DNA from: Rebecca billardiae RCC1528
Lineage: Eukaryota > Protista > Haptophyta
Reading direction: 5' to 3'
Assembly (NCBI GenBank): GCA_965240325.2
Contig: OZ251225.1
Location: forward strand, 2,232,001 to 2,296,000
Length of the DNA: 64,000 nt
Position numbers and translations under genes: made by a program. Below the pieces are notes generated by a model. The model ran no database searches, was not told the DNA's origin, and saw nothing but the letters and a program-made list of their open reading frames with translations. This document shows, one piece after another, positions 10,976 to 53,754 of the stretch (positions are counted from its first letter, which is position 1; each line of letters starts with the position of its first letter).

Positions 10976-13900
10976 CTAGCACACGTCGAAGCCGAGGACA
11001 TCCTTGAACAACTTTTTCGGCCTGCGCAGCTGGTGGAGGAGGGGCTCGACGAACACCTCGATCGCCCACGCGCGGTACGACTCGGGCACGCACGTCTTCA
11101 CAACGAGGTCGACGATCAGCTGCGTGATCACGACGCCCGGCTCGATGAGCGCGAGCTTGAACGCGGTCTCGATGAGCCACGCGACCAGGATCTCCTGCCG
11201 CCACATGTCGGGGTCGCGCACGCCCGCGCCGCCGAGGATGGAGAAGGCGAGCAGCATGCACGCCACGGCGCAGATGAGAAGCACGTTCACCGTGGTCGCC
11301 GTCCGCAGCTTCCACCTCTTCGGCTTGTTCGACCACCACTGCGCGTGCTCCAGCTCGGAGCGCGTGAGGCGCACGCGCTCGTGCACGCGATGCCGTGTCA
11401 TCGGCTCGGCGTGCACGCTTGCGCCCGCCGCGCCCAACTTCGCAGCCGCTGCCTCGGCCTCGCCGAGTTGAGTGGACGCGGCGCGCCCGTGCCTATGGCG
11501 GTGGCCGTGGCCGTGGCCGTGCACCTGGTCGTACGCGTCGAGGGCGGCGCGCGCGGCCACGTTGGGCTGCGCGATCACGTCGGTGGGCAGGATCTGGCGG
11601 CCATCGATGTACGGGCTGGTGAGGTGCATGACCTGCACCATCTTGCCCATCGGCACGCTCTCCTTGTCTCTGCGCCCCAGGCCGGCCGTCAGGCTGCCCC
11701 GTCGCGCCCTCTTGGCCGCGCCTCCGGCCGTCGATTCGCGCCGCGTGTGCATGCGCATGCTGAGGATGCCGTACGTTCTCCTCGCCTCGTCTGCGGGGAT
11801 CGGGCTGCGGCGGTACACGTGCTCAGCCTGCACGAAGCGCACGTCGGCCACGCCGTCGTGGAGGAAGTCGAGCGTGCGGTGCGCCTCCGCCAGCAGCTCG
11901 TCCTGCCCGCGGTCAAAGTGCAGCTGCATGCCCGCCATCTCGGAGAGGATGGACGGCCTGTTGGGCGGAGGGATCGACTTGATCACGATCTCCCGCCACG
12001 CGCGCGCGACGAAGAAGCCGACGATCTGCCCATGGTCCGTCGGGATGGAGATGAGCGCCTGGTCGGGCATGTTCACCGTCATCGTGCCCGGTGGTAGGCC
12101 AGCGGCCTTGGCCCGCATCCAGCCGGGCTGGGCCGCCGAGCGGACCGAGCTCGCGCGGCGCACGAGCGCGCGCGGCGGCGCCACCCTGCTGCTACTGCTG
12201 TCACGCGCGCCTGAATCCGCGGCGCGGCGCGGCAAGACGGGCGACGCAGCGGAGGCGCCGCCGAGGTGGGCCATCTGACCGAGCGACTGCAACCGAGGCA
12301 TGGGCGAAGGCCGCGGGCTCGGCGCGGGCCGGGGCGATTCCGTGGGGCCGCCCCCGAGGTAGGCCATCACTCCGAGGGACTGGGGCCGGGGCACGGGCAT
12401 GGGCGAGGGCTGCGCGCTCGGCGAGGGCGGAGGCGAGGGCGCGCCACTGGTCTCCTCGCCCACCGCCTCGCTGGCCGCCAGCGCGCTGACCGCGTCCGCC
12501 TCGATCAGCTTGACGAGCTCCGGCCGCGCGTACCGAAGCTTGTGCGCGACGGGCTCGATTCCGTCCGACTCGCTGTCCTTGGGCTGTTGGGCGTGGGGGC
12601 GGTCGAGGTGCGCGGCGTGCGCTGCGGCGTGGGCCGCGTCCTGCACCGTGTCGTGCGCCGCCCTCGCCGCGCCCCGTGCCGTCTTCGCCGCGGCGGCCGC
12701 ACTAGTCGCTGCGGTCGTCGGCTCGACCACCGCCGCCACGCGCAGCGCGGCGCGGCGCGCCTGCGCGTCCGCCGCGTCGACGCCGTCCGGCCGCTCCTCG
12801 AGCAGCCCGCGCCTGCGCACGCTCCACACGAGCAGCCGCTCGAGAAAGAAGGCCTCGTACGGGTAGCCCGACGCGATGCCCACCGCCACGCTCACGACGA
12901 GCTGCGTCGCGGAGATGTCCTCGGCCTGGCCGATGAAGAGCGCCATCACGAAGAGCTCGACCAGCGTCACGTTCATCAGCAGCAGCACGCGCATCTTCGC
13001 GCTCACCGGGTCGCCCGGCAGCCGCGTGAGCCACGAGGTGAGCGTCGAGCGCGTGAGCATGTGCGCGCCCGCGCGCCACCAGATCGAATTTGTTGCGCGC
13101 AGCTTCCACTGCGGCACCGACGGCTGCCGCTCGATCTGGAGGTCGACGCGGTGCGCGACGAGGAGGAGCAGCAGCATCGGCCCGAGCACGACGCACACGA
13201 CGACCACGCCCCAAAAGTTGGCCGCAAGCCGCCCGCCCACCTCCTGGACCACGCCGCTCGGTGACTTGTCCTCGAAGCTCTCCGTCTCTATTTGATTCAC
13301 TGCGACCTCGCCGGAGTCGTCGCCCGCCGCGACGCTCTCGATCGCGACGCCGAGGGCGACGAAGTCGGTGAGGTGGTCGCACGCGCACACGAGCGCGCCC
13401 GCGCTCACGGCGACGGCGCGGCAGCCTTCGGAGGACCAGCGGCGCGACGTCTCGTTCCAGAAGTGGCAGGTCTGCAGCTGGTCACATGCCGCCCCCGCGA
13501 AGCCCGCGTTGCACTCGCATGCTCCGCCGCTGCCGCCTCCGCTGTCGCCAACGGAGGCGTTGACAGCCGCCGCCGCGATGCAGCTGCCGCGCGGCTCGTC
13601 GCCGGGCGGCGCGCACTCGCTCGCGTCCGCGCACACGCCGATGGCGCGCGGCGAGTCGCCGAGCGACGGCAGCTCGTCCACGCCCAGCAGCGGGATGGTG
13701 ATGGTGATTGACGTCGCCAGCCCGTGAATCCGCAACGGCGCGCGCGACCGCGCGTCCGCGAGCGTCACGCCGAAGAGCGGCGAGTATAGCGCGCGCTGCT
13801 CGCCGAGCGCATACTCGGCGTCGCTGCCGCCGCCGAGCGCGCTGACGCGCGCCGTGCCGAGGTCGCCTGGGCGGTCTCGCGGGTCGTCGTGCACGTTGCG

Positions 13901-16900
13901 CTGGAGCAGCACGAGCTGCACGTCCACCGCGTCGCCGCTCACCGAACTGCCGTCGAGCAGGCCCACCGGTAGGCTCACCGTGCCGCGCCCGCCGGCCACA
14001 TCGACGGTCGAGTTCTCGACCGAGGCGGCAAACTCTCGCGCCGAGCTCAGGCTCAGCCGCTCGCCGACGAAATCGCGCGCGCGCTCGCCCGGGAGCACAC
14101 CGAGGAGCAGCCCGTCGGAGAGTGTGCGTGCGGAGCTCCGCACTGCCTCGTCTATCGCCGGCTCCGTCCCCGCGCTCGGCAAGGTGCCGCCGTCGCCGCC
14201 GCCGGGAGCGGCTGCGGCGAGGACCGAGTCAATGCCTCGGCCGACGTTGCCCGCGGTCGTGGCGTCAATGCCGTCTGCCGACGGCGAGTCCCCGACGATG
14301 GCGGCGAGCTGCGTGAGGCCTTCGAGCTGCGAGTCGGCGGAGAGCGCGAGCGGCTCGGCAAGCGCTGATGCGACCGCATTCGACAACGCCGCCCGCCCGC
14401 CGTCGAGCCCAGCCACGCCAGCGGCTGCGAGCGCGGCTGTTTGCGAGAGCAGGCTGGCTGTGATGGTGCGCGCATCGGTGGGATTGGCCGCAGTGACGGC
14501 GGGCAGCATGGCATCTGCGATGGCGACGACGAGCTGCAGCGCAAGGTCGACGTTACCCTCGTTGAGCGCGCCCTGCGCCGCGCTCACCTGCCCGGCCGCC
14601 GCCTCCGCGCTGACGTTGGCCGGCGGCAGCGGCAGCACGCGCGCGCGCGCGCTCGCCCCCGCCACGCCGCCAAACTGGTCGGTCACGGCGAGCGTTGCGT
14701 TGTGCTCGCCCTCGGGTAGCACGGCGGAAGCGGTGGGCTCGAGCGAGGACGCGGCGGTGAGTTGCTGCTCTGCCGCCGTGCCCGCGCGCACGTACCCGAA
14801 CGCGTACCGCAGCGGGAGGTCCTCAGTCTCGTCGTCCGTCCAGCCGGCCGCGATCAGCGCGACGGGCTCGAACGCGTTCGCCACAGCCGGCGAGAGCTGC
14901 AGGCTGCCGCCGTACGGAGGGCGGTTCATCACGACGGTGAGGCGCGAGACGGCGGGCTGCGCGGCGCCAGACACCTCGAGCGTAAGCGTGTACGTCGCAC
15001 CGGGCGTGAGCACCCCCGAACGAAAGACGAGAGAGCGCTTCGCGTCGCCCGTCGTCGTGGTCATGCGCGCGTCTGCGAGGTCGAGCGGGCGGCCGTCGAC
15101 GCGGCGCGCGGGCGCGGCCACGCCGTCGACCGTCTCGGCGACGCTCCAGCGGTACGCGAGGGCGGGCTCGTCAGCGGCCTCGGCAGCAGACACGCTGACA
15201 TCCAGCGTCACGAGCACCGAGATCGACTCGCCGGGCGAGTCCCAAGCCGCGTTGTACTTCCCGCGCCCGGCCCCACCGAGCGCCAGCGCCAGCTGCGGCA
15301 CAGCGCCCGGCACGAGCGTGAGCCGCACGCTGGCCGTGGCCGCGCGCCCGTCCGCGCTCGAGACGGCGAGGCGGACGTCGTACTCGCCCGCGGCGAGGCC
15401 GAGCTGAGCGGGCGCGAGCGAGAAAAGCGTCGAATTCGCAGCCGTGCCGGACACCGATGCGAGCGGCGACGGCGGCGGCCCGCCGCTGCCGCCGCCCGCG
15501 CTCACGAGCGTCCACGCGAACGCCAGGCCATCCGAGCCGCCCGTGTTGCCGTCGGCAGAGGCCGAACCGTCAAACACGATGGCGTCCGCCTCGAGCGAGG
15601 TGGTGCGGTCGCCCGAGGCGATGGCGGCGCGTACGGGCGCCGTGCCTACGAGCAGCTCCACACGCACGCTCGCGCTCGCCGCCGCGTCCGCCGCCATCGT
15701 CGTCGTGAGCTCGAGCTCATACCTGTAGCCAGCGCGAAGCGAGTAGGGCGCAAGCGTGAGCTGCGCGCGCGTGCCCGCCGTCGCCGCGTCGAAGGGCGGC
15801 GGCGGCGTAGGGCCGGCAGAGCCGTCGGCGGGCTGTGCGGCGCGCACTGCCCACTGGAACTGAATCCCACGCGACGTCGCCGCCGGCCAGCACGACGCAG
15901 GCTCGGCGCGCGCGAGCAGCACGTGCTTTGCGCCCGGCCGCGCCACCGTCTGCACCGCCGGGCCGAGCAGCGCGACCGTCGGCGAGAGCGAGGCGGTGCG
16001 GGCGACGGTGGCGGCGGCGGGCGCGGAGGCGAAGCCGAGGAACGACACGAGCCGGAGCTCGAAGACAAACTCGGCGCCCGGCGGCAGCTCCACGCTCAGA
16101 CTCGGCTCGCGCGCGGCCGCCATCCGAGAGACGAGCGCGGCCGCGGCGGCGGGCGCGAGCGCTGCTGCGGCAGTCGCGTTGACGGACCAGGAGTACTCGG
16201 GCGCCGCGATGCCGCCGGCGGACGAGCCGGTCGAGCGCAGCAGAATCGGCTGATACGGGCACGGCGACACCGTCGTCGGCCCCGCGAGCACCGCCACGGG
16301 CACCGGGCATCCACCGACGCACGCCCTCGCGGGCTGTGCGGGGATGGTCACGTGCGCTGCGGGCGCACACAGCTCCTGCGGACACGGCTGCGGGGTGTCG
16401 CGCGGCCGCAGCGCGTCGGCGCGGATGCCCACGGCATCGCCGGGGCGCAGGGCGGTGCGGCTGTCCAGATGCACGACAAGCGTGCTATCGTCCTCCCAGA
16501 AGCAGCCCGGCTCCGCCTCCGCCGCGCCGCGCACGCGGGCGAGCGTCGCATCGTCGAGCACAATGCTGCACGGCAGCACGCCCGTCGCCATGCCCGCGCG
16601 GTCGGTCGGCTGCGCGTCAAACTCGAGGCGCAGCGCGGTCGCCTGGCCGTTGAAGCGCGCCCGCAGCAGCCGCGGCGGGTGCAACAGGGCGGCTGCCGAT
16701 GTGCACCACGCCGTCGGCGGGCACTCCGCTGGCGCCACGCCGCCCAGCTCGCTCTCGAGCGCGACGGGCGCGCCGGTGCCATCGGCCACGCCCACCGAGA
16801 TTGCAATCTCCTGCAGAGCGGCCACCGTCGAGGCGAGCAGCGCGGACGAGCCCGCGCCGCCGCCGGCGGCAGGCTCGCCGTCGGTCGCGTTGAGCGCCGT

Positions 16901-19900
16901 TGCGTTGCTTGCGTTCGCGCCAGCGAGCGGCGTCGTCGTCGCGTTCGGCGCCCGCATCTCGCGCCCCAGCGTCGCGAGCAGCGGCGCGACCATCGTGAGC
17001 AGCGTCGACTGCACGAGCCGAGCGCCCGCGCTCACGCGCTGCACGTAGGCCGACGCGGCGGCCGTGGCGTTGGCCGTGGCGTTGGGCGAGGCGCGCACCG
17101 CGGCGGCCGCCGGCTGCACGAACGATCGCGTCGCGCGCACGGTGGAGGAGACCAGCGACGAGAGCGGCGCCACCGTCTCGGCCGGCGGCTGCACGCTCGC
17201 GCCGAGCTGCTGCGCGCTCGCGCGCGACACGACCGCCTCCACCGTCGCCTCCGAGCCGAGGTCGAGCGCGCACGACACGTTGGGCGGCGCAGCGCCGCTG
17301 CTGGCCCCACCGAGAGGCGCGCCGCTGGTCAGGTTGAGCGCCGCAGCGCGCAGCCTGGCCTCGAGCGCGTCCGCCATCAGCGTGGCCATCGCCTGCTGCA
17401 CGCTCACCGCGTGCGGACGCATCGCCTCTGCGGACGCAACCTGCGTCGAGTTGCCAGATTCGTACGCGGCGAGCGCGCCCGCGACGAGCGTCGTCACGGC
17501 GTGCAGCACCGCCGTCTGCTGCACGAGCTCCGCCTTGGGCGCGGCCTGCTCGCCACCGAGCCACAGCTCGGGGAACGGGTCGGCGAGCCCGCCGGCAGGC
17601 CCCATGTCCAGCTGCAGGCAGCCGCCGACCGCGAGCTCGGTCGCGAGCTCGAGGTCGGACGCGGCCGCCTCGCTGGGCGCGCCGCCGCCGGAGGAGAGCA
17701 GGGCGAGCGTGGGCGCGCCCACGCCGCGCGCCTCAAGCGCGCGCGCGGCGAGGAGCACGACCGTCGTCATCGACGAGATGGCCGTCTGCCCCGCGCCCGC
17801 CATCAGCGGAATCCTCACGTCGAGCCCGGAGTTGGAGTCGACGCACGCGCCGCCCGCCTCGGCGAGCAGCACGTACGGCGCGGCGCCGTACCGCCCGTCC
17901 GCGTTGAGCAGCGGGAAGCCGCCGCTCGCGTCGGTGGCGGCGAACGGCTCGTCCGCGTCGAGTCGAAGGTCGGCGTCGAGGTCGACGAAGACGATGCAGT
18001 CCGCAAGGTAGCCGTCGTACGCGCGGCCCATCGCTCGTGGCGAGGGCGGCGGCGGCGGCGGCGGCTGTGAGGCGGAGGGCGCAGTCGCAGGCGGCGACGA
18101 CGGCGGCGGCTGCGACGGTGGGCTGGGGGGCGGGCTCTGCGGCGGGCTCGGCGGCGGTGGTGATGGCCTGGGTGGTGGTGACGGCGGCGGGCTCAGCGGC
18201 GGGCTCGGTGGTGGCGGCGGTGGTGGGCTTGGCGGCGGTGGCGGGCTCGGCGGTGGTGACGGCGGCGGGGTGGGTGGCGGGCTCGGCGGCGGGCTCGGTG
18301 ATGGCGACGGTGGTGGGCTTGGCGGCGGTGGCGGGCTCGGCGGTGGTGACGGCGGCGGGCTCGGCGGCGGGCTCGGCGGCGGGCTCGGTGGAGGCGACGG
18401 TGGTGGGCTTGGCCGCGGTGGTGGGCTCGGCGGTGGTGACGGCGGCGGGCTCGGCGGCGGGCTCGGCGGCGGGCTCGGTGGTGGCGATGGTGGTGGGCTT
18501 GGCGGCGGTGGCGGGCTCGGCGGTGGTGACGGCGGCGGGCTCGGCGGCGGGATCGGTGGAGGGCTCGGTGGTGGCGACGGTGGTGGGCTTGGCGGCGGTG
18601 GCGGGCTCGGCGGTGGTGACGGCGGCGGGCTGGGCGGCGGGCTTGGCGGCGGGCTTGGGGGTGGTGACGGTGGTGGGCTTGGCGGCGGTGGCGGGCTCGG
18701 CGGTGGTGACGGCGGCGGGCTGGGCGGCGGGCTCGGCGGCGGGCTCGGTGGAGGCGACGGTGGTGGGCTTGGCGGCGGTGGTGGACTCGGCGGGGGTGAC
18801 GGCGGCGGGCTGGGTGGCGGGCTCGGCAGCGGGCTCGGTGGTGGCGACGGTGGTGGGCTTGGCGGCGGTGGCGGGCTCGGCGGTGGTGACGGCGGCGGGC
18901 TGGGCGGCGGGCGCGGCGGCGGGCTCGGTGGTGGCGACGGCGGTGGGCTTGGCGGCGGTGGTGGGCTCGGCGGTGGTGACGGCGGCGGGCTGGGCGGCGG
19001 GCTCGGCGGCGGGCTCGGTGGTGGCGACGGTGGTGGGCTTGGCGGCGGTGGCGGGCTCGGCGGTGGTGACGGCGGCGGGCTCGGCGGCGGGCTCGGCGGC
19101 GGGCTCGGTGGTGGCGATGGTGGTGGGCTTGGCGGCGGTGGCGGGCTCGGCGGCGGGCTCGGTGGTGGCGACGGTGGTGGGCTTGGCGGCGGTGGTGGGC
19201 TCAGCGGTGGTGACGGCGGCGGGCTGGGCGGCGGGCTTGGCGGCGGGCTTGGGGGTGGTGACGGTGGTGGGCTTGGCGGCGGTGGCGGGCTCGGCGGTGG
19301 TGACGGCGGCGGGCTGGGCGGCGGGCTCGGCGGCGGGCTCGGTGGTGGCGACGGTGGTGGGCTTGGCGGCGGTGGCGGGCTCGGCGGTGGTGACGGCGGC
19401 GGGCTGGGCGGCGGGCTCGGCGGCGGGCTTGGGGGTGGCGACGGTGGTGGGCTTGGCGGCGGTGGTGGGCTCGGCGGTGGTGACGGCGGCGGGCTCGGCG
19501 GCGGGCTCGGCGGCGGGGTCGGTGGTGGCGATGGTGGTGGGCTTGGCGGCGGTGGCGGGCTCGGCGGCGGGCTCGGTGGTGGCGACGGTGGTGGGCTTGG
19601 CGGCGGTGGTGGGCTCGGCGGTGGTGACGGCGGCGGGCTGGGCGGCGGGCTTGGCGGCGGGCTTGGGGGTGGTGACGGTGGTGGGCTTGGCGGCGGTGGC
19701 GGGCTCGGCGGTGGTGACGGCGGCGGGCTGGGCGGCGGGCTCGGCGGCGGGCTCGGTGGTGGCGACGGCGGTGGGCTTGGCGGCGGTGGTGGGCTCGGCG
19801 GTGGTGACGGCGGCGGGCTGGGCGGCGGGCTCGGCGGCGGGCTTGGGGGTGGCGACGGTGGTGGGCTTGGCGGCGGTGGTGGGCTCGGCGGTGGTGACGG

Positions 19901-22900
19901 CGGCGGGCTCGGCGGCGGGCTCGGCGGCGGGCTCGGTGGTGGCGATGGTGGTGGGCTTGGCGGCGGTGGCGGGCTCGGCGGCGGGCTCGGTGGTGGCGAC
20001 GGTGGTGGGCTTGGCGGCGGTGGTGGACTCGGCGGTGGTGACGGCGGCGGGCTGGGCGGCGGGCTCGGCGGCGGGCTCGGTGGCGGGCTCGGGGGTGGTG
20101 ACGGCGGTGGGCTTGGCGGCGGTGGCGGGCTCGGCGGTGGTGACGGCGGCGGGCTGGGCGGCGGGCTCGGCGGCGGGCTCGGTGGAGGCGACGGTGGTGG
20201 GCTTGGCGGCGGTGGTGGACTCGGCGGGGGTGACGGCGGCGGGCTGGGTGGCGGGCTCGGCGGCGGGCTCGGTGGTGGCGACGGTGGTGGGCTTGGCGGC
20301 GGTGGCGGGCTCGGCGGTGGTGACGGCGGCGGGCTGGGCGGCGGGCTCGGCGGCGGGCTCGGTGGTGGCGACGGCGGTGGGCTTGGCGGCGGTGGTGGGC
20401 TCGGCGGTGGTGACGGCGGCGGGCTGGGCGGCGGGCTCGGCGGCGGGCTTGGGGGTGGCGACGGTGGTGGGCTTGGCGGCGGTGGTGGGCTCGGCGGTGG
20501 TGACGGCGGCGGGCTCGGCGGCGGGCTCGGCGGCGGGCTCGGCGGTGGCGATGGTGGTGGGCTTGGCGGCGGTGGCGGGCTCGGCGGCGGGCTCGGTGGT
20601 GGCGACGGCGGTGGGCTTGGCGGCGGTGGTGGACTCGGCGGTGGTGACGGCGGCGGGCTGGGCGGTGGGCTCGGCGGCGGGCTCGGTGGCGGGCTCGGGG
20701 GTGGTGACGGCGGTGGGCTTGGCGGCGGTGGTGGACTCGGCGGTGGTGGTGACGGTGGCGGGCTGGGCGGCGGGCTCGGCGGCGGGCTCGGTGGAGGCGA
20801 CGGTGGTGGGCTTGGCGGCGGTGGTGGACTCGGCGGTGGTGACGGCGGCGGGCTGGGCGGTGGGCTGGGCGGTGGGCTCGGCGGCGGGCTCGGTGGTGGC
20901 GACGGTGGTGGGCTTGGCGGCGGTGGCGGGCTCGGCGGTGGTGACGGCGGTGGGCTGGGCGGCGGGCGCGGCGGCGGGCTCGGTGGCGGGCTGGGCGGCA
21001 AGCTCGGCGGTGGCGGAGAGGGCGGTGGCGAGGGCGGCGGCGGCGAGGGCGGCGGGTTTGGCGGCGGCGAGGGGGGCGGGGCCGGAGGTGGTGCGCCTGG
21101 GAGTGTCGACGGCGTCACGGCAGGGTAACCGTGCGTGCCGCCGGGCTGCCACAACTGCGTGTTCTGGACCCTCCTGCAAGTATCGATGATACCAATCCGC
21201 GGCGACGGGGCGGGGGCACCGCCGTACACGCGTGGGCGTCAGCGGCAGGAGCAGCAAGCGCGGCGCGGCGTGGGATCACCCGGGGCACGCGGGGACCGGC
21301 CCGTCGCGCGGGCACCACCGCCCCTCGCCCTGGCCGCGCATACATATCGGTCAGGGCCGTCATGTTGCCGATCTCCGTGGGAAGGGTGCCCGAGAACAAG
21401 TTGTCATACATGTACCTGCGCAGCGAGTGGCGTTCGAGCGCATTGCCGACGCGAGCGGGCGCTCAGACACGGGAGGGTGTGCGCCGCGCTGTGCGCCCGC
21501 GTGTCGCCGTGTCTGGCGAGATTGTCGCGCCATCGCTCCTGGCCCCGGCCGCGCGGCGTACATCTGGGTCAGGGCCGTCATGATGCCGATCTCAGTCGGC
21601 AGGGTGCCCGAGAACGAGTTGACAAACGCGTCCCTGCGCAGCGAGTGGCGTTCGAACGCATTGCCGACGCGAGCTGGCGGTCAGACTCGGAAGGGCGTGC
21701 GCCGCACTGTGCGCCCGCGCGGCTGGCGAGCATGTCGAGCCACCGCCCCTGGACCCGGTCGCGCGTACATCCGCTTCAGGGCCGTCACGAGGCCCATCTC
21801 CGTCGGCAGGCTGCCCGAGAAGGAGTTGTGTTGCGCCGTCCTGCGCAGCGAGTGGCGTTCGAGCGCATTGCCGACGCGAGCGGGCGGTCAGACTCGGCAG
21901 GGCGTGCTCAGCGGCACCGTGCACCCGCGTGGCGGGTCAGAGTGGCGTGCCACCACCCCTGGCCTTGATCGCGCATACATCGTAGTCAGGGCTGTCATCA
22001 GGCCAATCTCCGTTGGAAGGCCCGAAAACCAGTTCTCATATATGTACCTGCGCAGCGAGTGGCGTTCGAGCGCATTGCCGACGCGAGCTGGCGGTCAGGC
22101 TCGGAAGGGCGTTGTGCGCCCGCGTGGCTGGCGAGCATGTCGCGCCACCGCCCCTGCCTGGCCCCGGGCCGCGCGTACATCTGCTTCAGGGCCGTCACGA
22201 GGCCCATCTCCGTCGGCAGGGTGCCCGAGAAGGAGTTGGCCTGCACCCGCCTGCGCAGCGAGTGGCGTTCGAGCGGGTTGCACGCGAGCGGGCGCTCAGG
22301 CTGGGCCGGGTGTGCGCCGCGCTGTGCGCCCGCGTGGCTGGCGAGCATGTCGCGTCATCGCTCCTGGCCCCGGCCGCGCGTACATCCAGACCAGGGCCGT
22401 CATGAGGCCGATCTCCGTCGGAAGGCTGCCCGAGAAGGAGTTGTGTCGCACCTCCCTGCGCAGCGAGTGGCGTTCGAGCGCATTGCCGACACGAGCAGGC
22501 GGTCAGACTCGGCAGGGTGCGCGGTGCGCTGTGCGCCCACGTGGCTGGCAAGCATGTCGCGCCATCGCTCCTGGCCCCGGCCGCGCGTACATATGGCCCA
22601 GGGCCATCATGAGGCCGATCTCCGTCGGAAGGCTGCCCGAGAAGGAGTTAACCTCCAAGCGCCTGCGCAGCGAGTGGCGTTCGAGCGCATTGCCGACACG
22701 AGCAGGCGGTCAGACTCGGCAGGGTGCGCGGTGCGCTGTGCGCCCACGTGGCTGGCAAGCATGTCGCGCCATCGCTCCTGGCCCCGGCCGCGCGTACGTA
22801 TAGCCCAGGGCCGTCATGAGGCCCATCTCCGTCGGCAGGCTGCCCGAGAAGGAGTTGACATAGGCCTCCCTGCGCAGCGAGTGGCGTTCGAGCGGGTTGC

Positions 22901-24802
22901 ACGCGAGCGGGCGCTCAGGCTGGGCCGGGCGTGCGCCGCGCTGTGCGCCCGCGTGGCTGGCGAGCATGTCGCGTCATCGCTCCTGGCCCCGGCCGCGCGT
23001 ACATCCAGACCAGGGCCGTCATGAGGCCGATCTCCGTCGGAAGGCTGCCCGAGAAGGAGTTGTGTTGCGCCGTCCTGCGCAGCGAGTGGCGTTCGAGCGG
23101 GTTGCACGCAAGCGGGCGCTCAGGCTGGGCCGGGCGTGCGCCGCGCTGTGCGCCCGCGTGGCTGGCGAGCATGTCGCGCCACCGCCCCTGGCCCCGGGCC
23201 GCACGTACATCTTCCACCCAGCCGTCACGAGGCCGATCTCAGTGGGAAGGCCCGAGAAGGAGTTGGCATACGCCTCCCTGCGCAGCGAGTGGCGTTCGAG
23301 CGGGTTGCACGCGAGCGGGCGCTCAGGCTGGGCAGGGCGTGCGCCGCGCTGTGCACCCGCGTGGCTGGCGAGCATGGCGCGCCACCGCCCCTGCCTGGCC
23401 CCGGGCCGCGCGTACATCTGCCTCAGGGCCGTCATGAGGCCGATCTCCGTCGGAAGGGTGCCCGAGAAGGAGTTGGCATACACCCACCTGCGCAGCGAGT
23501 GGCGTTCGAGCGGGTTGCATGCGAGCGGGCGCTCAGGCTGGGCCGGGTGTGCGCCGCGCTGTGCGCCCGCGTGGCGGGTCAGAATGTCGCGCCATCGCTC
23601 CTGGCCCCGGCCGCGCGTACATATGGGTCAGGGTCGTCATGTTGCCGATCTCCGTGGGAAGGCTGCCCGAGAAGGAGTTAACATCCAAGCGCCTGCGCAG
23701 CGAGTGGCGTTCGAGCGCATTGCCGACACGAGCAGGCGGTCGGACTCGGCAGGGTGCGCGGTGCGCTGTGCGCCCGCGTGGCTGGCGAGAATGGCGCGCC
23801 ATCGCTCCTGGCCCCGGCCGCGCGTACATTTCGTTCACAGCCGTCACGAGGCCGATCTCCGTCGGAAGGGTGCCCGAGAACGAGTTGGCATACGCCCGCC
23901 TGCGCAGCGAGTGGCGTTCGAGCGCATTGCCGACACGAGCAGGCGGTCAGACTCGGCAGGGTGCGCGCTGCGCTGTGCACCCGCGTGGCTGGCGAGCATG
24001 TCGCGCCACCGCCCCTGGACCCGGCCGCGCGTACATCTCAGTCAGGGCCGTCATCAGGCCGACCTCCGTCGGAAGGCTGCCCGAGAAGGAGTTGTCTTGC
24101 GCCTGCCTGCGCAGCGGGTGGCGTTCGAGCGCAGTGCGCAGGCAGCCCCAGGCGAGGACGAGCAAGCCGCGTGAGCGCATGCCGCCATGCCCCTGACGTT
24201 CCTCTCAGCTGCCTGCCTGACGTCCGGCACTCCGGCGACCACACGACTGCGCGCACGGGCACGCGCGGCTCGCAGGCACGCGCGCTGCGCCATGCGCGTA
24301 CAGTGAAGTGAGGGCGAAGAGCGTACCGATGGCGGTTGGAACTGTGCCCGAGTAGCCAGCCGCAAGCACCTGCGCACACGGCACGCGCGCCGCGTGGCCG
24401 CGCGGCGCGAGGTGCACGTCAGACAGACAACAACAGCGACAACAGGCTGCGTGCGACAGGACGACAGGAGGCGACCACTGCTGCAGGTCAGGGCGACCGT
24501 GCGAGCGCGGCTGGCATCGCTCCCCGAAGCAGCGCGTGGCGCCCGTCGTCGCATGCCTGTGCTACATGGCCGCTCGCCGGAGCGCGCCATGAGCCAAGGT
24601 TGGCCACGCCGTCGCGATGGGCGCGGGGCCTCGCGCCGACACGCACATTCAGGCTGGTGCACGCTGCCGGGTCGGCGATGCAGTCCGTGTACTCGGTGCT
24701 GTTTTCGAAGGTGATGCCAGCAGCGCCCGACACCATCAACAGAAGCATCACGAGCGCGCCACCGTGGGCATGCCGCAGGCTGGTCGGCACGTTGGTGAGC
24801 AT
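10976..24802 (-). CDS. Giant LRR - SPPP stalk - REJ/GAIN-GPS - multi-TM (polycystin-1-like) receptor, 17 exons, about 3807 aa
   Basis: Exons 5'->3': 24647-24802 (signal peptide and Cys N-cap), 24302-24369 (LRR1), 14 LRR cassette exons between 24106 and 21344, and a final exon 10976-21173. All junctions are GT-AG and in frame. The final exon carries an SP-rich stalk, REJ-like NRPPYGG...GWTDD..DLPLRY, EGF-like CECNAGFAGAAC, GPS CHFWNE..WSSEGC...CACDHLTDF and about 5 TM helices. Confidence 0.85.
18040..21090 (-). repeat. Coding minisatellite: extensin-like (SPPP)n stalk with a 90 bp higher-order unit
   Basis: About 3 kb of a 90 bp (30 aa: 7x SPPP + PP) unit with shorter and longer variants. Synonymous variants recur periodically. 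Confidence 0.95.
21344..24106 (-). repeat. Array of 14 exon+intron units (~205 bp), each exon encoding one 24-aa (or 23-aa) plant-type LRR
   Basis: Exons: 24035-24106, 23828-23899, 23621-23692, 23416-23487, 23209-23277 (69 bp), 23003-23074, 22798-22869, 22591-22662, 22384-22455, 22179-22250, 21979-22047 (69 bp), 21769-21840, 21562-21633, 21344-21415. Consensus xxxxNSFSG(S/T)LPTEIGL(M/V)TALxxM. Acceptor ...CCACTCGCTGCGCAG, donor GTA(C/T)G. Confidence 0.93.
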
Positions 24803-25619: not shown

Positions 25620-26408
25620 GGTGGCGTGCGTTCTCACAGGTCTGGTCTCCAATTCCCGGCAGCCGGGCACCGAGCCGCAGGACGAGCTCTTGCTGGAGGA
25701 CTCGCCCGAGCGCGCGTTCGCGCGCTTGCACACCGCGCTGCGCACCATGCACGACCAGCGCGTCCTGCGCTTCTACACGCAGAACGACTCGTCGTGGACG
25801 ATCGATCAGGACATTGGCCTGCTGCAGTCGCAGTATCGGCGCACGTGCTGCACGCGACCTCGCAGCGCGCGTGGCCCGCATTCGAGGGGAAGACGCCGAG
25901 GGCGTGCAAGGAGCGGCTGCTGCGGCTGCGGGACATCGTAGACAGGCTCGAGCCGCGGGACATTGGCCTGCTGCAGTCGCAGTATGCGCTGCTGCACGCG
26001 ACCTCGCAGCGCGCGTGGCCCGCATTCGAGGGGAAGACGCCGAGGGCGTGCAAGGAGCGGCTGCTGCGGCTGCGGGACATCGTAGACAGGCTCGAGCCGC
26101 GGCTGCTCGCGACGCTCTTCCCCGCCGACGCCGACGACGAGCTGCGCGAGCTTGTCCGACGCTGCGCCGATCCCGCCGGCGCGCGAGGCTGTGCGAGGCT
26201 GACGGGCGGGCTGCCGAGCGCGATCTCAGCGCTGCGCGCGGCCACAGCAGGGCTGCCCGAAGCGCACCGGGCGGAGGCGCTGCGGCTGCTGCGCGTCGAG
26301 TTCGACACGGCCCAGCCCCCCGAGGCCGTCGATCGAGTCCGGATTACTCGCGCCCGCGCCTCCTGCACGGCGACGGCGCCGGGCGCGCGCATCGTAGTGA
26401 TTCGGTGA
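25620..26408 (+). pseudogene. Frameshifted gene remnant of unknown function with an internal tandem duplication
   Basis: Protein-like text is split over two frames (..ELLLEDSPERAFARLHTALRTMHDQRVLRFYTQND..DIGLLQSQY / ALLHATSQRAWPAFEGK..). A ~145 bp duplication spans 25809-25957 / 25958-26102, and the first copy carries a frameshifting indel. Confidence 0.55.
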
Positions 26409-27546
26409 AGAACGCGACAACTACCAGGGCCGTGCGCCATCAACTTCGTTGTTCACTACCCGAAGATCGGCGTAGCCGATCATAATAATTCGTCTTAATA
26501 TGTATATATATAGAGAGAGAGAGAGAGAGAGTAGTAGTAGTTCTTATATATTTTTCATATATATATATATATATATTGATTGGAGTCAAGCCGTCTGCCG
26601 TGGATGCATGTGCTGTCTGTGCGTGCATAAATAAGCATGCGGCCGCGCTGCCATCTAAGATCGTCTCACTTAAATCTGCTGCTTTGATTCCGCCGAGTGA
26701 TGACTGAGACTACAGTTTACTATGATTTAACGTGCACACTTGGTTAAGGCGTGATTATTAACGCCATCCAACACTGCACAAAGACACCGCCACAAAACAG
26801 ACCGGCGCAGGCAGGTGAGGGGCGCGTTGCCGCACCTCATCGAGGCGGCCATTGCAGCAAGCGGCCGCCCCGCGCTCGGAGGCACGCGCTCGAGAGCGCG
26901 CTCTGACACCACACGGGGAGGGTGCTGCACCTGGATCTTGTATCCCAGCCACCTCGAGAGTGCAGCCACGCCAAACACCTGCCTGCGCTGTGAGCGACGC
27001 CGCGTCGACTGATCGAGCCCCAGCCGAAGGGAAGAACTGGAAGATGAAGGGTCGTGGGCAGGTCCACATGCCCGGCGTAAACTGCGCGCTGCTCGCCCGC
27101 GAAGGCAAGCAGCGCACCCCCGCCGCCTTCGCAAGCAGCGGGGGCGGGGGAAAGCGGCCCCTCTCGGCTGCCGCCAGCCCCTGTCTGCCCACCTACCCCG
27201 GTTGTGGCACAGAGCCTTCGCCTGCCCCGAACACAAACACCTTGTGAACAGGGCCAGGCGCGGCCCCACGCCCCATCGGGACGAGTGGGCCCGCGAAGAG
27301 CGCGCCCACGACCTCGTCGGTCGTCGCCGACGCCGCGCCCTCATGCCCAGACGCCGCAGCCGGGGCGCCATCACCCAGAGGGTGATGGCAGCCCCCGGCC
27401 TCTTGCCCTTGGCGGTCCGAAGACATGCGGGACGGCCGCGACGACGGCTCCGACGATGCCGAAGGCGCAAGCTCGCGGAAGGGGCTGACAGAGTTGGGAA
27501 GCTGCGGCGTCGGGCCCGCACGCGCCACGGCGCTACTGCTTGGTCA

Positions 27547-28258
<712 letters not shown>

Positions 28259-28268
28259 AGTTCAGAAA

Positions 28269-30104
28269 TATGACCGCGTTCCGCGGTCCTTTTCCGTAGA
28301 ACGAACGTAGTTCGGGGCCCGCGGTGGCGGTGCACCCTCCGTCGCACCCTCCGTCGCGATCGAGAGTGGGCCCGCCCGGCCGCGAGCCCGGCAGCCAGTA
28401 GACTCCAGCGGCGCGCCGCCGCCCGCCGCGCGGCCGGGCGGGCCCATCGCAGCCGCCGGCGAGGCGCCGATTGTGCACAGTCGAAGTCATGGCCGACTGA
28501 GATCGTCGGCACGCGCTGCTGCTGCGAGATCGTCGGCGTCGGCACGCGCTGCTGCTGCGAGGGCTGCTCGCTCGCCAGCTGACCGAGGCACTCGAGCAAG
28601 CCAAGGTATGAGCACGCCTCGTCGCAGCCAGCCAGGGCCTCCATGATTTTGTACAGCATCTCGCACGCGTCCTGCTGCTGCTGCCCAAACGCCGTTGTCC
28701 ACCGACAGACCTCCGCGATCGCGTCGTGGAGCGGCTCGAGCAAGCTACGCGTCGGCCCCACCTCGCTGGGCCACTCGCAGTTGACATGCGCAAGCGCCAG
28801 CGAGCGCATGCTCGGGACACGCCGATGGGGTTGGTGGACTGCTCAGCCGCGGCAGATGTGGCGAGCGAGACGATGGAAGGGCACGCGAGCAGCGCCGCCA
28901 GCAGCGAGCCGAGGTAGCACGTGACGCCTAGGTTGAGCGTGCCCAGCAGGCTGAGCGAGCCGGCCGGGCGCCCCCGCTGCGGCTGTGCTTTCTCTGCAGC
29001 GGGCATTTCCCCGTCGAGCGCGGCGAGTGCCGCAAAGCGGCTGCCAGCTGTTGGGCCGGGTGAGGAGGAGGGAGGGAGCTGGCCTGCGGGGCGCGTGGTG
29101 AAGTCGGTGATCAGTCGCGTCGCGCTCCCCCTGCCGATTGCGCCTTCGTCCTCCAGCACGGTGCGGACCTTGCGAACGAAGTTGTAGATCGACCATTTGG
29201 GCACGTTGTACTTCATTCACCGCCGCAGAGGGCACGTCCTGCTTGTGCCTCACGACTGAGATGGCAGCAGCGATGCTCTGGAGCGTGCTCTTAGCCACCT
29301 TCTTCACTGCCCCGGATTCGAGCAGCACGTTCAATACGCGGCGAGCGCGGTCCTCGTCGGCGTCGCCAGCTGACGTGCTCGGCATGAGTCGGCATCATGT
29401 CCACGTGAGCGCAGAAAAGTGGCCTCGAGCCTGCTCAATCAAGGCCTGCTCAATCAAGTGCGCACAACTGGCTCGCCAGAGGGCAAAAGGCCAATAGCTA
29501 CTCCCAATTCCCGAAGGCTGATGATGAATACGCACACGTGCGCCTGATGAATATCGATGATATTCTGCTCGACCCCGTAGCAGTCCACGAACCATATACA
29601 TTACAATGTCATATGAAAACGAAGCGGTGCAAATGATGTTCTCCAGTATAGTGGATACGACCCCGACGAAGCGATTTTATGCCTGCGTGAACCATACATA
29701 TGAATACGAAGCGCGGTGCAAATGTTCTCCAGTAGTGAATACGACCCCGACGAAGCCAATATATATCGGTTGGTTACTTCGCTGATCCCGTAAGGACGTG
29801 CAAAAATAGCCTCAAAGAAGCTGACGCTTGTACAGTATTGGACTTGTAACCGTCCTACTTCACACAGAAGTGAACTCTCACGCCCGGCCGTCCACGATTG
29901 ATAGTAGGGGAATGTCGTGGGCGCGGTTTTTTTCTCCGTGATGCATCTGTAGAGAGGGTCTCAAAATTCGAAACTCGGTCTCCGCCAGCCCTAAAAATCG
30001 GCCCCCGCGTCCCTTTTTCTTGATCAAAGATCTTTTTGAAACGTGGTTCGGGCCCGCTGGTGCGGGCTCCACTCGCTGCGCGCTCCGCCCTGCACCGCGG
30101 GCCA
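28269..30104 (-). mobile_element. Non-autonomous Helentron/Helitron2-like element, copy 2 (second subfamily)
   Basis: Same terminal hairpin and sub-TIR (variant GGCCCGCGGTGGCGGTGCA). The other end is ...CGCTCCGCCCTGCACCGCGGGCCA with the conserved TGATCAAAGATCTTTTTGA near-palindrome. It has its own 2x tandem repeat at ~29585-29760. Confidence 0.75.
28480..29385 (-). pseudogene. Degenerate ORF in element copy 2: pipsqueak-like HTH plus a ubiquitin-specific protease (C19) N-terminal fragment
   Basis: AAISVVRHKQDVPSAA / KYNVPKWSIYNFVRK (frameshift near 29217). GTLNLGVTCYLGSLLAALLAC is a USP Cys box. [12 protein letters not shown] is a QQD box after a second frameshift. Confidence 0.6.
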
Positions 30105-53515: not shown

Positions 53516-53754
53516 GCCTCGCGCGTTGATGACGCAGGGGAGGATCCGCCAGACGCGCCGCGGCTCGTGCGGTGCACACCGGACGGATGCTGCAGCGCTT
53601 CGTCGGTCCGCCATTGTTCCGGGTCAAGTTCGTCGTCTACTCCGCTCGCCTTCACAGTCACGTCCACGAGGTCGTCGCCTGCACCAGCGCCAAGGGGCGA
53701 GGCGGTCGCAGCGGCGTGGCAAGCTCGCCGCGGCTTCTGCGGGTCGTGCGCGAG

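What the first reader, a model, noticed from the sequence alone, without database searches (positions are those of the whole stretch)
21344..24106. Hidden cassette array of 14 single-LRR exons with hypervariable binding-face codons between near-identical introns: candidate receptor diversification system
Seen: each exon is 72 or 69 bp and phase 2-2, so any can be skipped, duplicated or swapped in frame. The splice junction falls inside the xxMxxxxN strand. The scaffold NSFSG(S/T)LPTEIG is nearly invariant. The first four codons vary in gene order as QAQD, RAYA, RLDV, WVYA, EAYA, TAQH, EAYV, RLEV, EVRH, RVQA, YIYE, TAQH, DAFV, YMYD. The last two vary as TE, NE, TH, RQ, WK, VW, GY, GH, VW, KQ, TT, KR, TQ, TD. 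Introns 22456-22590 and 22663-22797 are identical over 135 bp by eye, yet the 12 coding nt that follow them differ at 10 of 12 positions. Known: these positions form the concave ligand-binding face of LRR solenoids, and one-LRR-per-exon shuffling is described for Ectocarpus ROCO proteins. Inference: introns are homogenised by recombination or conversion while contact residues diversify, producing a variable recognition surface (immunity, prey or mate recognition).
Basis: partly seen in the sequence, partly recalled or inferred. Interest (0 to 1): 0.9.

Follow-up and report, generated by a model that had tools for sequence, protein, structure and literature searches.

The report
Tandem single-LRR exon array, variable face
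A giant surface-receptor gene of a very GC-rich alga builds its leucine-rich-repeat tip from 14 tandem copies of one small exon plus its intron. The copies differ mainly at the ligand-facing residues. This gene design is already published for brown algae, and nothing here shows an active diversity-generating machine.

Summary
On the minus strand, 14 exons of 72 or 69 nt, all phase 2, alternate with 13 homologous GT..AG introns of 131-146 nt. With two upstream exons and one 10.2-kb final exon they splice into a single 3,807-aa frame: signal peptide, about 15 plant-type LRRs, a Ser-Pro3 rod, REJ, GPS and membrane helices.

Per-base diversity between copies:
- five x codons of LxxLxLxxN: 0.57
- mid-intron: 0.13
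- scaffold third positions: 0.17

Half of the informative site pairs fail the four-gamete test. Near-identical tracts of 136 and 197 nt stop at the variable patches. The best reading is ordinary germline evolution: tandem exon-intron duplication, unequal crossover or gene conversion, and selection that keeps the binding face diverse.

The "diversification system" part is unsupported:
- no spare cassettes elsewhere in the 64 kb
- no docking/selector complementarity
- no RNA run listed, so splicing and exon skipping are untested

The design (72-bp phase-2 LRR exons, shuffling, positive selection) is published for brown-algal ROCO genes. This scan's notes report it in at least five other genes of this genome. 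It is a new member of a known kind.

The parts
24647..24802 (-). Exon 1: ATG, signal peptide (hydrophobic core at aa 14-32), an NST sequon, a Cys pair, and the start of the first LRR strand; ends in phase 0
   Evidence: The donor GTGCGT follows at 24646.
24302..24369 (-). Exon 2: an older, degenerate LRR (VLAAGYSGTVPTAIGTLFALTS + split L), 68 nt; it sets phase 2 for the array
   Evidence: It is followed by GTACGCGC, the same donor type as in the array.
24107..24301 (-). Intron upstream of the array (195 nt). Its last 25 nt match the array introns with 1 mismatch, which marks the 5' edge of the duplicated unit.
21344..24106 (-). Array of 14 single-LRR exons. Window coordinates, written high to low in minus-strand reading order: 24106-24035, 23899-23828, 23692-23621, 23487-23416, 23277-23209, 23074-23003, 22869-22798, 22662-22591, 22455-22384, 22250-22179, 22047-21979, 21840-21769, 21633-21562, 21415-21344. 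The 13 introns between them are 131-146 nt, from GTACGCGCGG to CGCTCGAACGCCACTCGCTGCGCAG.
22456..22797 (-). Introns 7 and 8 (100% identical, 135 nt each) flanking exon 8. The identical tract of 136 nt stops at the variable patches on both sides.
21174..21343 (-). Last intron (170 nt). Its 5' end is homologous to the array introns, the rest is unique, and its acceptor is TTGCAG. It marks the 3' edge of the duplicated unit.
10976..21173 (-). Final exon of 10,198 nt, in frame with the array. It encodes the partial last LRR strand (M RVQNTQLW), the Ser-Pro3 rod, REJ, GPS, membrane helices and the cytosolic tail, and ends with the stop codon at 10976-10978.
18101..21079 (-). Ser-Pro3/Pro5 rod: a 12-nt unit in 90-nt higher-order repeats, about 31 copies. 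An uninterrupted Pro-rich run of 754 aa is 76% Pro and 22% Ser.
14522..15772 (-). REJ domain (PF02010, E 6.4e-29)
13361..13471 (-). GPS motif (PF01825, E 1e-9) with an intact CACDHLTDF core at aa 3005, containing the HL/T position that is the cleavage site in characterised GPS domains. Hydrophobic helices follow.

Best explanation
The stretch is the LRR-head part of one large minus-strand gene (17 exons, 3,807 aa) for a cell-surface receptor or adhesin. The protein has a signal peptide, about 15 plant-type 24-residue LRRs, a long Ser-Pro3 rod, REJ and GPS domains, and membrane helices.

The head grew by tandem duplication of a 207-bp unit, one 72-nt LRR exon plus its ~135-nt intron. It has since evolved in concert: unequal crossover and short gene-conversion tracts keep introns and scaffold codons alike.

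The five solvent-exposed residues of each beta strand stay different. Two are encoded at the end of one exon and three at the start of the next. Selection for a differentiated binding surface most likely maintains this.

Shown: the anatomy, the frame, the diversity contrast and the recombination signal.

Inferred: constitutive splicing, selection as the cause of the contrast, and the ligand-binding role. The process is germline evolution, not a somatic or programmed generator of diversity.
For: Gene model:
- All 16 introns are GT..AG, and the spliced CDS is 11,424 nt with a single terminal stop.
- Exon lengths differ only by a whole codon (72 or 69 nt), whereas intron lengths vary from 131 to 146 nt and 6 of 13 are not multiples of three.
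- 8 of 13 introns carry an in-frame stop.
- GC3 of scaffold codons is 0.92, matching 0.91 in the REJ/GPS-to-stop part of the final exon; intron GC is 0.75.
- Scaffold dN/dS is 0.42.

LRR class:
- A profile of the 14 cassettes hits plant LRR-receptor-kinase ectodomains: HAESA 5iyx at 6e-9, then GSO1, MIK2 and FLS2.

Diversity contrast:
- Per-base diversity is 0.574 at the 15 nt of variable codons, 0.127 in the mid-intron and 0.171 at scaffold third positions. Mann-Whitney p is 1e-11 and 7e-6.
- At the variable codons pN is 0.61 and pS 0.42; on the scaffold they are 0.08 and 0.18.
- Codon 2 varies only among A, V, L, I and M, so the fold is kept.

Recombination:
- 192 of 378 informative site pairs fail the four-gamete test, and the PHI permutation p is 0.014.
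- By direct reading of the alignment, two 5' and two 3' intron haplotypes occur in all four combinations.
- A 136-nt tract (intron 7 = intron 8) and a 197-nt tract with one mismatch (exon 6 + intron 6 against exon 9 + intron 9) both end at variable patches.
- Intron similarity tracks the upstream scaffold (r 0.48, p 0.006) but not the downstream head patch (r 0.03).

Context:
- REJ and GPS domains are present.
- Relatives carry the same body with TIG or LRR heads.
Against: - No RNA data could be obtained, so splicing rests on sequence logic only.
- Variable codons are near saturation, so the Nei-Gojobori ratio of about 2 is imprecise.
- Synonymous diversity is also raised inside the patches (0.42). 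This fits old patches as well as fast ones.
- Mismatch-rich patches could block conversion tracts without any selection.
- No orthologue, allele or second strain was available to test turnover.
- No structure was predicted, so the concave-face assignment rests on the motif and on alignment to solved LRR ectodomains.
Confidence: 0.72

Rival explanations
1. Active diversification system. The alga would use the interchangeable same-phase exons to make many receptor variants, either by regulated exon skipping or choice, or by frequent mitotic unequal crossover and conversion. Clones or single cells would then carry different heads.
For: - All exons are 3n long and in the same phase, and donors and acceptors are almost identical, so any donor could in principle join any acceptor.
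- 100% and 99% identical introns show very recent exchange.
- Alternative LRR-exon combinations are reported for brown-algal ROCO genes (PMC11378527).
- Scan notes report several similar arrays in this genome (not checked here).
Against: - No transcript data exist.
- No docking/selector complementarity was found: the invariant intron 25-mer has no reverse-complement match within 3 mismatches, and inverted repeats are only weak, 72-88% complementary.
- The intron fold is no better than shuffles and shows no covariation.
- Short introns and short exons suggest intron-definition splicing (inference).
- Recombination signals are what any tandem repeat shows on evolutionary time.
Confidence: 0.1
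2. No selection for diversity. The surface residues are simply old and unconstrained. Conversion homogenises everything else, because heteroduplexes are rejected at the mismatch-dense patches.
For: - Synonymous diversity is also high inside the patch codons: 0.42 against 0.18 on the scaffold.
- Tract ends coincide with patches.
- GC3 of patch codons is 0.70 against 0.92, as expected if they are left out of GC-biased conversion.
Against: - The tail patch VW was carried along in the exon 6 / exon 9 tract, so patches are not absolute barriers.
- Patches are only 6-12 nt long and lie between perfectly matching blocks. Neutral patches should often be co-converted (inference).
- None of the 70 patch codons is a stop, Pro or Cys, and the residues are rich in Y, Q, T, E, R, H and W.
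- Codon 2, inside the patch, stays hydrophobic.
Confidence: 0.15
3. Lamprey-VLR-like assembly: an incomplete germline gene completed from flanking LRR cassettes.
For: Only the general idea of LRR cassettes with variable concave residues.
Against: - The germline gene is complete and in frame.
- tblastn with three cassettes finds no other LRR-coding piece in the 64 kb.
- The cassettes are bounded by splice sites, not by bare homology.
Confidence: 0.01
4. The repeat is a non-coding satellite, or codes on the plus strand, where mechanical ORFs of 523 and 425 aa run across it.
For: Long plus-strand ORFs exist.
Against: - The plus-strand ORFs change frame from unit to unit and give no conserved repeat peptide.
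- The minus-strand exons give a clean LRR consensus that matches solved LRR ectodomains, and they join a 10-kb ORF in frame.
Confidence: 0.02

Closest known systems
Brown-algal ROCO (LRR-ROC-COR) genes with one LRR per exon (Zambounis et al. 2012, PMC3341825; Teng et al. 2024, PMC11378527)
   Same: - One 24-residue LRR per 72-nt exon, with phase-2 introns.
- Repetitive exon-intron structure read as exon shuffling.
- Positive selection reported at concave-face residues.
- Proposed role in variable ligand recognition.
   Different: - In ROCO genes the exon runs GxxPxx...LxxLxLxxNxLx, so the whole beta strand lies in one exon. Here the junction lies inside the strand (LxxM | xLxxN), so each binding strand is encoded by two exons.
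- ROCO genes encode an LRR-ROC-COR GTPase, not an extracellular head. This head sits behind a signal peptide, on a Pro rod and a REJ-GPS membrane body.
- ROCO introns contain inactivated or reverse LRR exons. These 135-nt introns contain none.
- The different intron position suggests an independent origin (inference).
Glycoprotein-hormone receptor (LH/FSH/TSH receptor) LRR exons
   Same: Similar-sized LRR exons, all introns phase 2, read as growth by exon duplication. As cited in PMC11378527.
   Different: In those receptors the arrays are old and fixed, the introns are long and dissimilar, and there is no sign of recent conversion or of a hypervariable face between copies (my own knowledge, not tested here).
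Polycystin-1 / sea-urchin REJ receptor family
   Same: N-terminal LRRs, a REJ domain and a GPS motif with an intact HL/T site, followed by membrane helices.
   Different: - No PLAT or PKD-channel domain and no PKD repeats were found at E <= 0.01.
- Only about four or five hydrophobic helices follow the GPS.
- A Ser-Pro3 rod lies between head and body.
Plant LRX (LRR-extensin) proteins and plant LRR receptor-kinase ectodomains
   Same: A plant-specific 24-residue LRR type (LxxLxLxxNxFSGxLPxxIGxM), followed by an extensin-like Ser-Pro(n) region. The best solved matches are HAESA, GSO1, MIK2 and FLS2.
   Different: LRX proteins are secreted wall proteins with no membrane body. Plant LRR-RLK heads are mostly encoded in large exons (my own knowledge). 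There is no kinase here.
Lamprey VLR and insect Dscam diversity systems
   Same: Modular repeats, LRR or Ig, with variable binding residues arranged as cassettes.
   Different: VLR needs an incomplete germline gene plus donor cassette banks. Dscam needs mutually exclusive splicing with docking and selector RNA pairing. Neither feature was found.

Membership tests
Leucine-rich repeat, plant-specific 24-residue class | Repeat of 23-25 residues with LxxLxLxxNxL followed by (S/T)GxIPxxLGxL | tested here: met
   The consensus is xAxxNSFSGSLPTEIGLMTALxx plus the split M, with nine invariant columns. The profile matches HAESA, GSO1, MIK2 and FLS2 ectodomains, best E 6e-9. Single 23-aa cassettes are too short to score in Pfam.
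One-LRR-per-exon shuffling arrays (brown-algal ROCO type) | Each LRR on its own 72-nt exon, with all introns in the same phase | tested here: met
   Twelve exons of 72 nt and two of 69 nt, all phase 2.
One-LRR-per-exon shuffling arrays (brown-algal ROCO type) | Excess amino-acid change at concave-face positions | tested here: met
   pN is 0.61 at the five x codons and 0.08 on the scaffold. Per-base diversity is 0.57, against 0.13 in the mid-intron. The cause, selection or a conversion barrier, is not resolved.
One-LRR-per-exon shuffling arrays (brown-algal ROCO type) | The same exon boundary relative to the LRR motif, and an attached ROC-COR GTPase | tested here: not met
   The junction lies inside the beta strand, not after NxLx. 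The body is REJ-GPS, and no ROC or COR domain was found in the 2,308 aa scanned, from after the rod to the stop. This gene works like the ROCO arrays but is not a member of that gene family.
One-LRR-per-exon shuffling arrays (brown-algal ROCO type) | Transcript support and alternative exon combinations | not testable with these tools
   No RNA run was listed for this stretch, so read laying could not be used.
Polycystin-1 / REJ receptor family | REJ domain plus a GPS motif with the HL/T site | tested here: met
   PF02010 at 6.4e-29 and PF01825 at 1e-9. CACDHLTDF at aa 3005.
Polycystin-1 / REJ receptor family | PLAT domain and an 11-helix body with a channel-like end | tested here: not met
   No PLAT or PKD_channel hit at E <= 0.01. 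Only about four or five hydrophobic segments follow the GPS.
VLR-type somatic LRR assembly | An incomplete germline gene flanked by donor LRR cassettes | tested here: not met
   The gene is complete and in frame, and there is no further LRR-coding piece in the 64 kb.
Dscam-type mutually exclusive splicing | A docking site complementary to a selector sequence in each array intron | tested here: inconclusive
   The invariant intron 25-mer has no reverse-complement match within 3 mismatches. Inverted repeats are only weak, 72-88% complementary, and there is no covariation. G-U-rich or distant pairing cannot be excluded.

The most novel reading that the evidence does not exclude
The array, with its sister arrays in this genome, is a recombination-prone contingency locus. 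Frequent mitotic unequal crossover or conversion between near-identical introns, with or without exon skipping, would give clonal lineages or cells different LRR heads on a far-reaching stalk. That would be a variable surface-recognition system in this alga, independent of the brown-algal one.
Probability: 0.1. Interest if true: 0.75.

Novelty: new member of a known kind. Interest (0 to 1): 0.3.

Why it matters
This is a clean, quantifiable example of how an LRR binding domain grows and keeps its ligand face diverse while introns and scaffold are homogenised. It occurs in an alga that does not look like a brown alga (69.7% GC; species not identified here) and in an extracellular receptor rather than a cytosolic GTPase.

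The different intron position suggests that one-LRR-per-exon arrays arose more than once. If strains or clones prove to differ in cassette number or order, these receptors would be candidates for self/non-self, mate, prey or pathogen recognition in an alga whose recognition biology I believe to be little studied.

As it stands it adds a case to a published pattern, and this scan has already reported the same pattern in other genes of the same genome.

Tried and rejected
1. RNA evidence. The look-up of sequencing runs with kind rna listed no run, so read laying could not be used.
2. Full-length relatives. The search for homologous proteins on body residues 1150-2750 gave no hit.
3. Metagenome scans. 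An exon-scaffold DNA pattern found nothing. A peptide-pattern scan found 18 loci, all of 36-50% GC. Fifteen of them encode plant-type LRRs in an open frame and three gave no motif hit. None is a close relative.
4. Pfam on single cassettes gave no hits because they are too short.
5. Intron RNA structure. Fold z-scores were 0.04, -0.80 and 0.86, and the covariation term was -0.2 with 1 compensatory pair of 39. Rejected.
6. Docking/selector pairing was not found.
7. Plus-strand ORFs are frame-hopping and spurious.
8. Donor cassettes elsewhere in the window: none.
9. Structure prediction, and protein searches with the spliced LRR head, were not run. The spliced protein has no reference and I did not type it.
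10. Organism. It was not identified. The published Diacronema lutheri genome is 73% GC (PMC8379373), which is compatible with the 69.7% GC of this window but untested.


Full report
**What is there.** The window is 69.7% GC. Between 21508 and 24137, Tandem Repeats Finder reports a 207-bp unit in 12.7 copies, score 3143. Read on the minus strand, every unit is a short exon followed by an intron that runs from GTACGCGCGG to CGCTCGAACGCCACTCGCTGCGCAG.

Twelve are 72 nt and two are 69 nt. Each exon begins with a G that completes a codon started by the last two bases of the previous exon, so all introns are phase 2. The 25-nt intron 3' end occurs 14 times within 3 mismatches, against none in 100 shuffles.

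**Is it a gene, and which one.** Upstream lie two more exons.
- Exon 1 (24802-24647) holds an ATG, a signal-peptide-like hydrophobic core, an NST sequon and a Cys pair.
- Exon 2 (24369-24302) is an older, degenerate LRR exon.

Downstream, a 170-nt intron (21343-21174) leads into a 10,198-nt exon that runs to the stop at 10976.

Joined, the 17 exons give 11,424 nt and 3,807 aa with a single terminal stop. The features along the protein are:
- a partial last LRR strand
- a Ser-Pro3/Pro5 rod, with an uninterrupted run of 754 aa that is 76% Pro, encoded by 90-bp higher-order repeats
- a REJ domain (E 6.4e-29) and a GPS motif (E 1e-9) with an intact CACDHLTDF core
- several hydrophobic helices and a long tail

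The coding signatures agree with this model.
- Exons vary in length only by a whole codon, while introns vary from 131 to 146 nt and 6 of 13 are not multiples of three.
- 8 of 13 introns carry an in-frame stop.
- Scaffold GC3 is 0.92, like 0.91 in the REJ/GPS-to-stop part of the final exon; the introns are 0.75 GC.
- Scaffold dN/dS is 0.42.

The long plus-strand ORFs across the array change frame from unit to unit and are spurious. No RNA run was listed, so splicing is inferred, not shown.

**What kind of LRR, and where the variation sits.** A profile of the 14 cassettes hits solved plant LRR-receptor-kinase ectodomains: HAESA 5iyx at 6e-9, then GSO1, MIK2 and FLS2. Written across the junction, the repeat reads L-x22-x23-M | x1-(A/V/L/I/M)-x3-x4-N-S-F-S-G-(S/T)-L-P-T-E-I-G. 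This is LxxLxLxxNxL followed by the plant-type GxLPxxIG.

By established LRR structural knowledge, these are the solvent-exposed residues of the concave sheet. I could not fold the spliced head, because it has no reference, so this assignment rests on the motif and on the alignment to solved structures.

**How large the contrast is.**

| Sequence class | Per-base diversity between copies |
|---|---|
| 15 nt of the five variable codons | 0.574 |
| Scaffold third positions | 0.171 |
| Mid-intron | 0.127 |
| Whole intron | 0.101 |

Mann-Whitney p is 1e-11 against the intron columns and 7e-6 against scaffold third positions.

Nei-Gojobori values are pN 0.61 and pS 0.42 at the variable codons, and 0.08 and 0.18 on the scaffold. 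Amino-acid-changing divergence on the binding face is therefore four to six times the local neutral level. The raw ratio of about 2 is imprecise, because these codons are near saturation.

Codon 2, the inward-facing L position, varies only among A, V, L, I and M, so the fold is preserved. None of the 70 variable codons encodes a stop, Pro or Cys, and Y, Q, T, E, R, H and W are common. GC3 of the variable codons is 0.70 against 0.92 on the scaffold (Fisher p 6e-6).

**Recombination.** Introns 7 and 8 are 100% identical, and introns 6 and 9 are 99% identical. By direct reading of the alignment, two 5' and two 3' intron haplotypes occur in all four combinations.

Outside the patches, 192 of 378 pairs of informative sites fail the four-gamete test, and a PHI-type permutation gives p 0.014.

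The longest identical tracts end at variable patches.
- One is 136 nt: intron 7 equals intron 8.
- The other is 197 nt with one mismatch: exon 6 codon 3 to the end of intron 6, against the same span of exon 9 and intron 9.
- Units 6 and 9 are not neighbours, so this looks like conversion rather than a fresh tandem duplication.

Intron similarity tracks the upstream scaffold (r 0.48, p 0.006) and weakly the upstream tail patch (r 0.28, p 0.01). It does not track the head patch that directly follows the intron (r 0.03). Head motifs fall into a few related groups (xAYx, RLxV, xAQx, xVxx, YxYx) scattered along the array, as expected from old segmental duplications later overwritten by conversion.

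**Most likely mechanism.** The head grew by tandem duplication of an exon-intron unit. It has since evolved in concert through unequal crossover and short conversion tracts. The ligand-facing residues are kept different, most likely by selection for a differentiated binding surface. I put this at about 0.7.

One rival holds that the patches are merely old and unconstrained, and escape conversion because mismatch-dense heteroduplex is rejected. It is not excluded (about 0.15). The raised synonymous diversity and the low GC3 inside the patches fit it. Against it:
- the tail patch VW was carried along in the 6/9 tract
- the patches are tiny and lie between perfect homology blocks
- their residue content looks selected

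**The "diversification system".** I found nothing that goes beyond germline evolution.
- There is no other LRR-coding piece in the 64 kb, so there is no donor bank of the lamprey VLR kind.
- The invariant intron end has no complementary partner, and inverted repeats are weak, so there is no Dscam-like docking/selector design.
- The introns fold no better than shuffles and show no covariation.
- Skippability in frame follows from the arithmetic of any symmetric exon.

Without RNA, or a second strain or haplotype, exon skipping and somatic turnover remain untested. I give them about 0.1.

**Comparison with what is known.** Brown-algal ROCO genes have one LRR per 72-nt phase-2 exon, exon shuffling, positive selection on the concave face and alternative LRR-exon combinations (PMC3341825; PMC11378527). 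The second paper also recalls the phase-2 LRR exons of gonadotropin receptors.

This case shares the design but differs in three ways.
- The intron lies inside the beta strand, so each binding strand is encoded by two exons. In ROCO genes the whole strand sits in one exon.
- The introns are compact, homogeneous and free of pseudo-exons.
- The head is extracellular, on a Pro rod and a REJ-GPS body.

It works like the ROCO arrays but is not a member of that gene family.

The body has 834 relatives at E <= 1e-3. The best (48% identity) and several other close relatives carry TIG heads, and one more distant relative carries a plant-type LRR head. Heads on this body are therefore interchangeable in evolution. 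The gene lacks the PLAT and channel parts of polycystin-1.

**Earlier notes of this scan.** The same pattern was reported in at least five other genes of this genome, with follow-ups reaching the same verdict. A family of LRR-rod-REJ/GPS receptors was also noted. I did not see those sequences and could not compare them.
- The note that the moving unit is exon tail + intron + next exon head (s1-353050) is only half borne out here. The intron travels with the upstream scaffold and tail, not with the downstream head.

**Verdict.** This is a new member of a known kind, already seen by the scan on other DNA of the same genome. Interest 0.3.

Noticed in passing
window 18101-21079 (minus strand): The rod between the LRR head and the REJ domain is an almost pure Ser-Pro3/Pro5 array built from 90-bp higher-order repeats, about 31 copies at 84% matches. 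The uninterrupted Pro-rich run is 754 aa at 76% Pro. As a polyproline-II helix it could hold the head several hundred nm from the membrane (inference), and it should be length-polymorphic.
   Followed up: partly
window 23693-23827 and 23278-23415: Introns 2 and 4 of the array are 135 and 138 nt long and have no in-frame stop, so retaining either would keep the reading frame and insert 45 or 46 residues. Of the other 11 introns, 8 carry an in-frame stop and 3 have lengths that would shift the frame.
   Followed up: no
window 21416-24131, the last 25 nt of each of 14 introns: The intron 3' end CGCTCGAACGCCACTCGCTGCGCAG is invariant in 12 of 14 introns and has 1 mismatch in the other two. One of those is the older intron upstream of the array. 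In the mid-intron only 55% of columns are invariant. This is probably the branch-point-to-acceptor signal, and it also gives a perfect homology block next to every head patch.
   Followed up: partly
window 27549-28258: A cluster of microsatellites, (AT)46, (ATAGAG)91, (AT)19 and (TG)22, sits in an otherwise ~70% GC region. It lies inside a mechanical 829-aa minus-strand ORF (26727-29216) that has no Pfam hit.
   Followed up: no
window 25809-26102: A 144-bp unit is repeated twice at 96% identity, about 1 kb upstream of the receptor gene's start.
   Followed up: no
window 51893-53614 (minus strand): A single 574-aa ORF combines a HAD-type hydrolase domain (E 5e-20) with a PsbP domain (E 3e-12). 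The PsbP domain suggests that the organism is photosynthetic, and the fusion itself is unusual.
   Followed up: no
L019 (Logan ERR14847148 contig) and proteins P0001-P0007, P0107: The REJ-GPS body has many relatives: 834 at E <= 1e-3. Five of the seven closest relatives (P0001-P0005) carry IPT/TIG heads, and four of the seven have cytosolic EF-hands. The more distant P0107 carries plant-type LRRs. The same membrane body is therefore combined with different heads.
   Followed up: partly
window 21344-24106, variable codons: Third positions of the variable codons are only 70% GC, against 92% in scaffold codons of the same exons. TAT, CAA, CAT, GTT and GAT are used in a genome that otherwise avoids A/T-ending codons. 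Either these codons turn over quickly, or they are left out of GC-biased conversion.
   Followed up: partly
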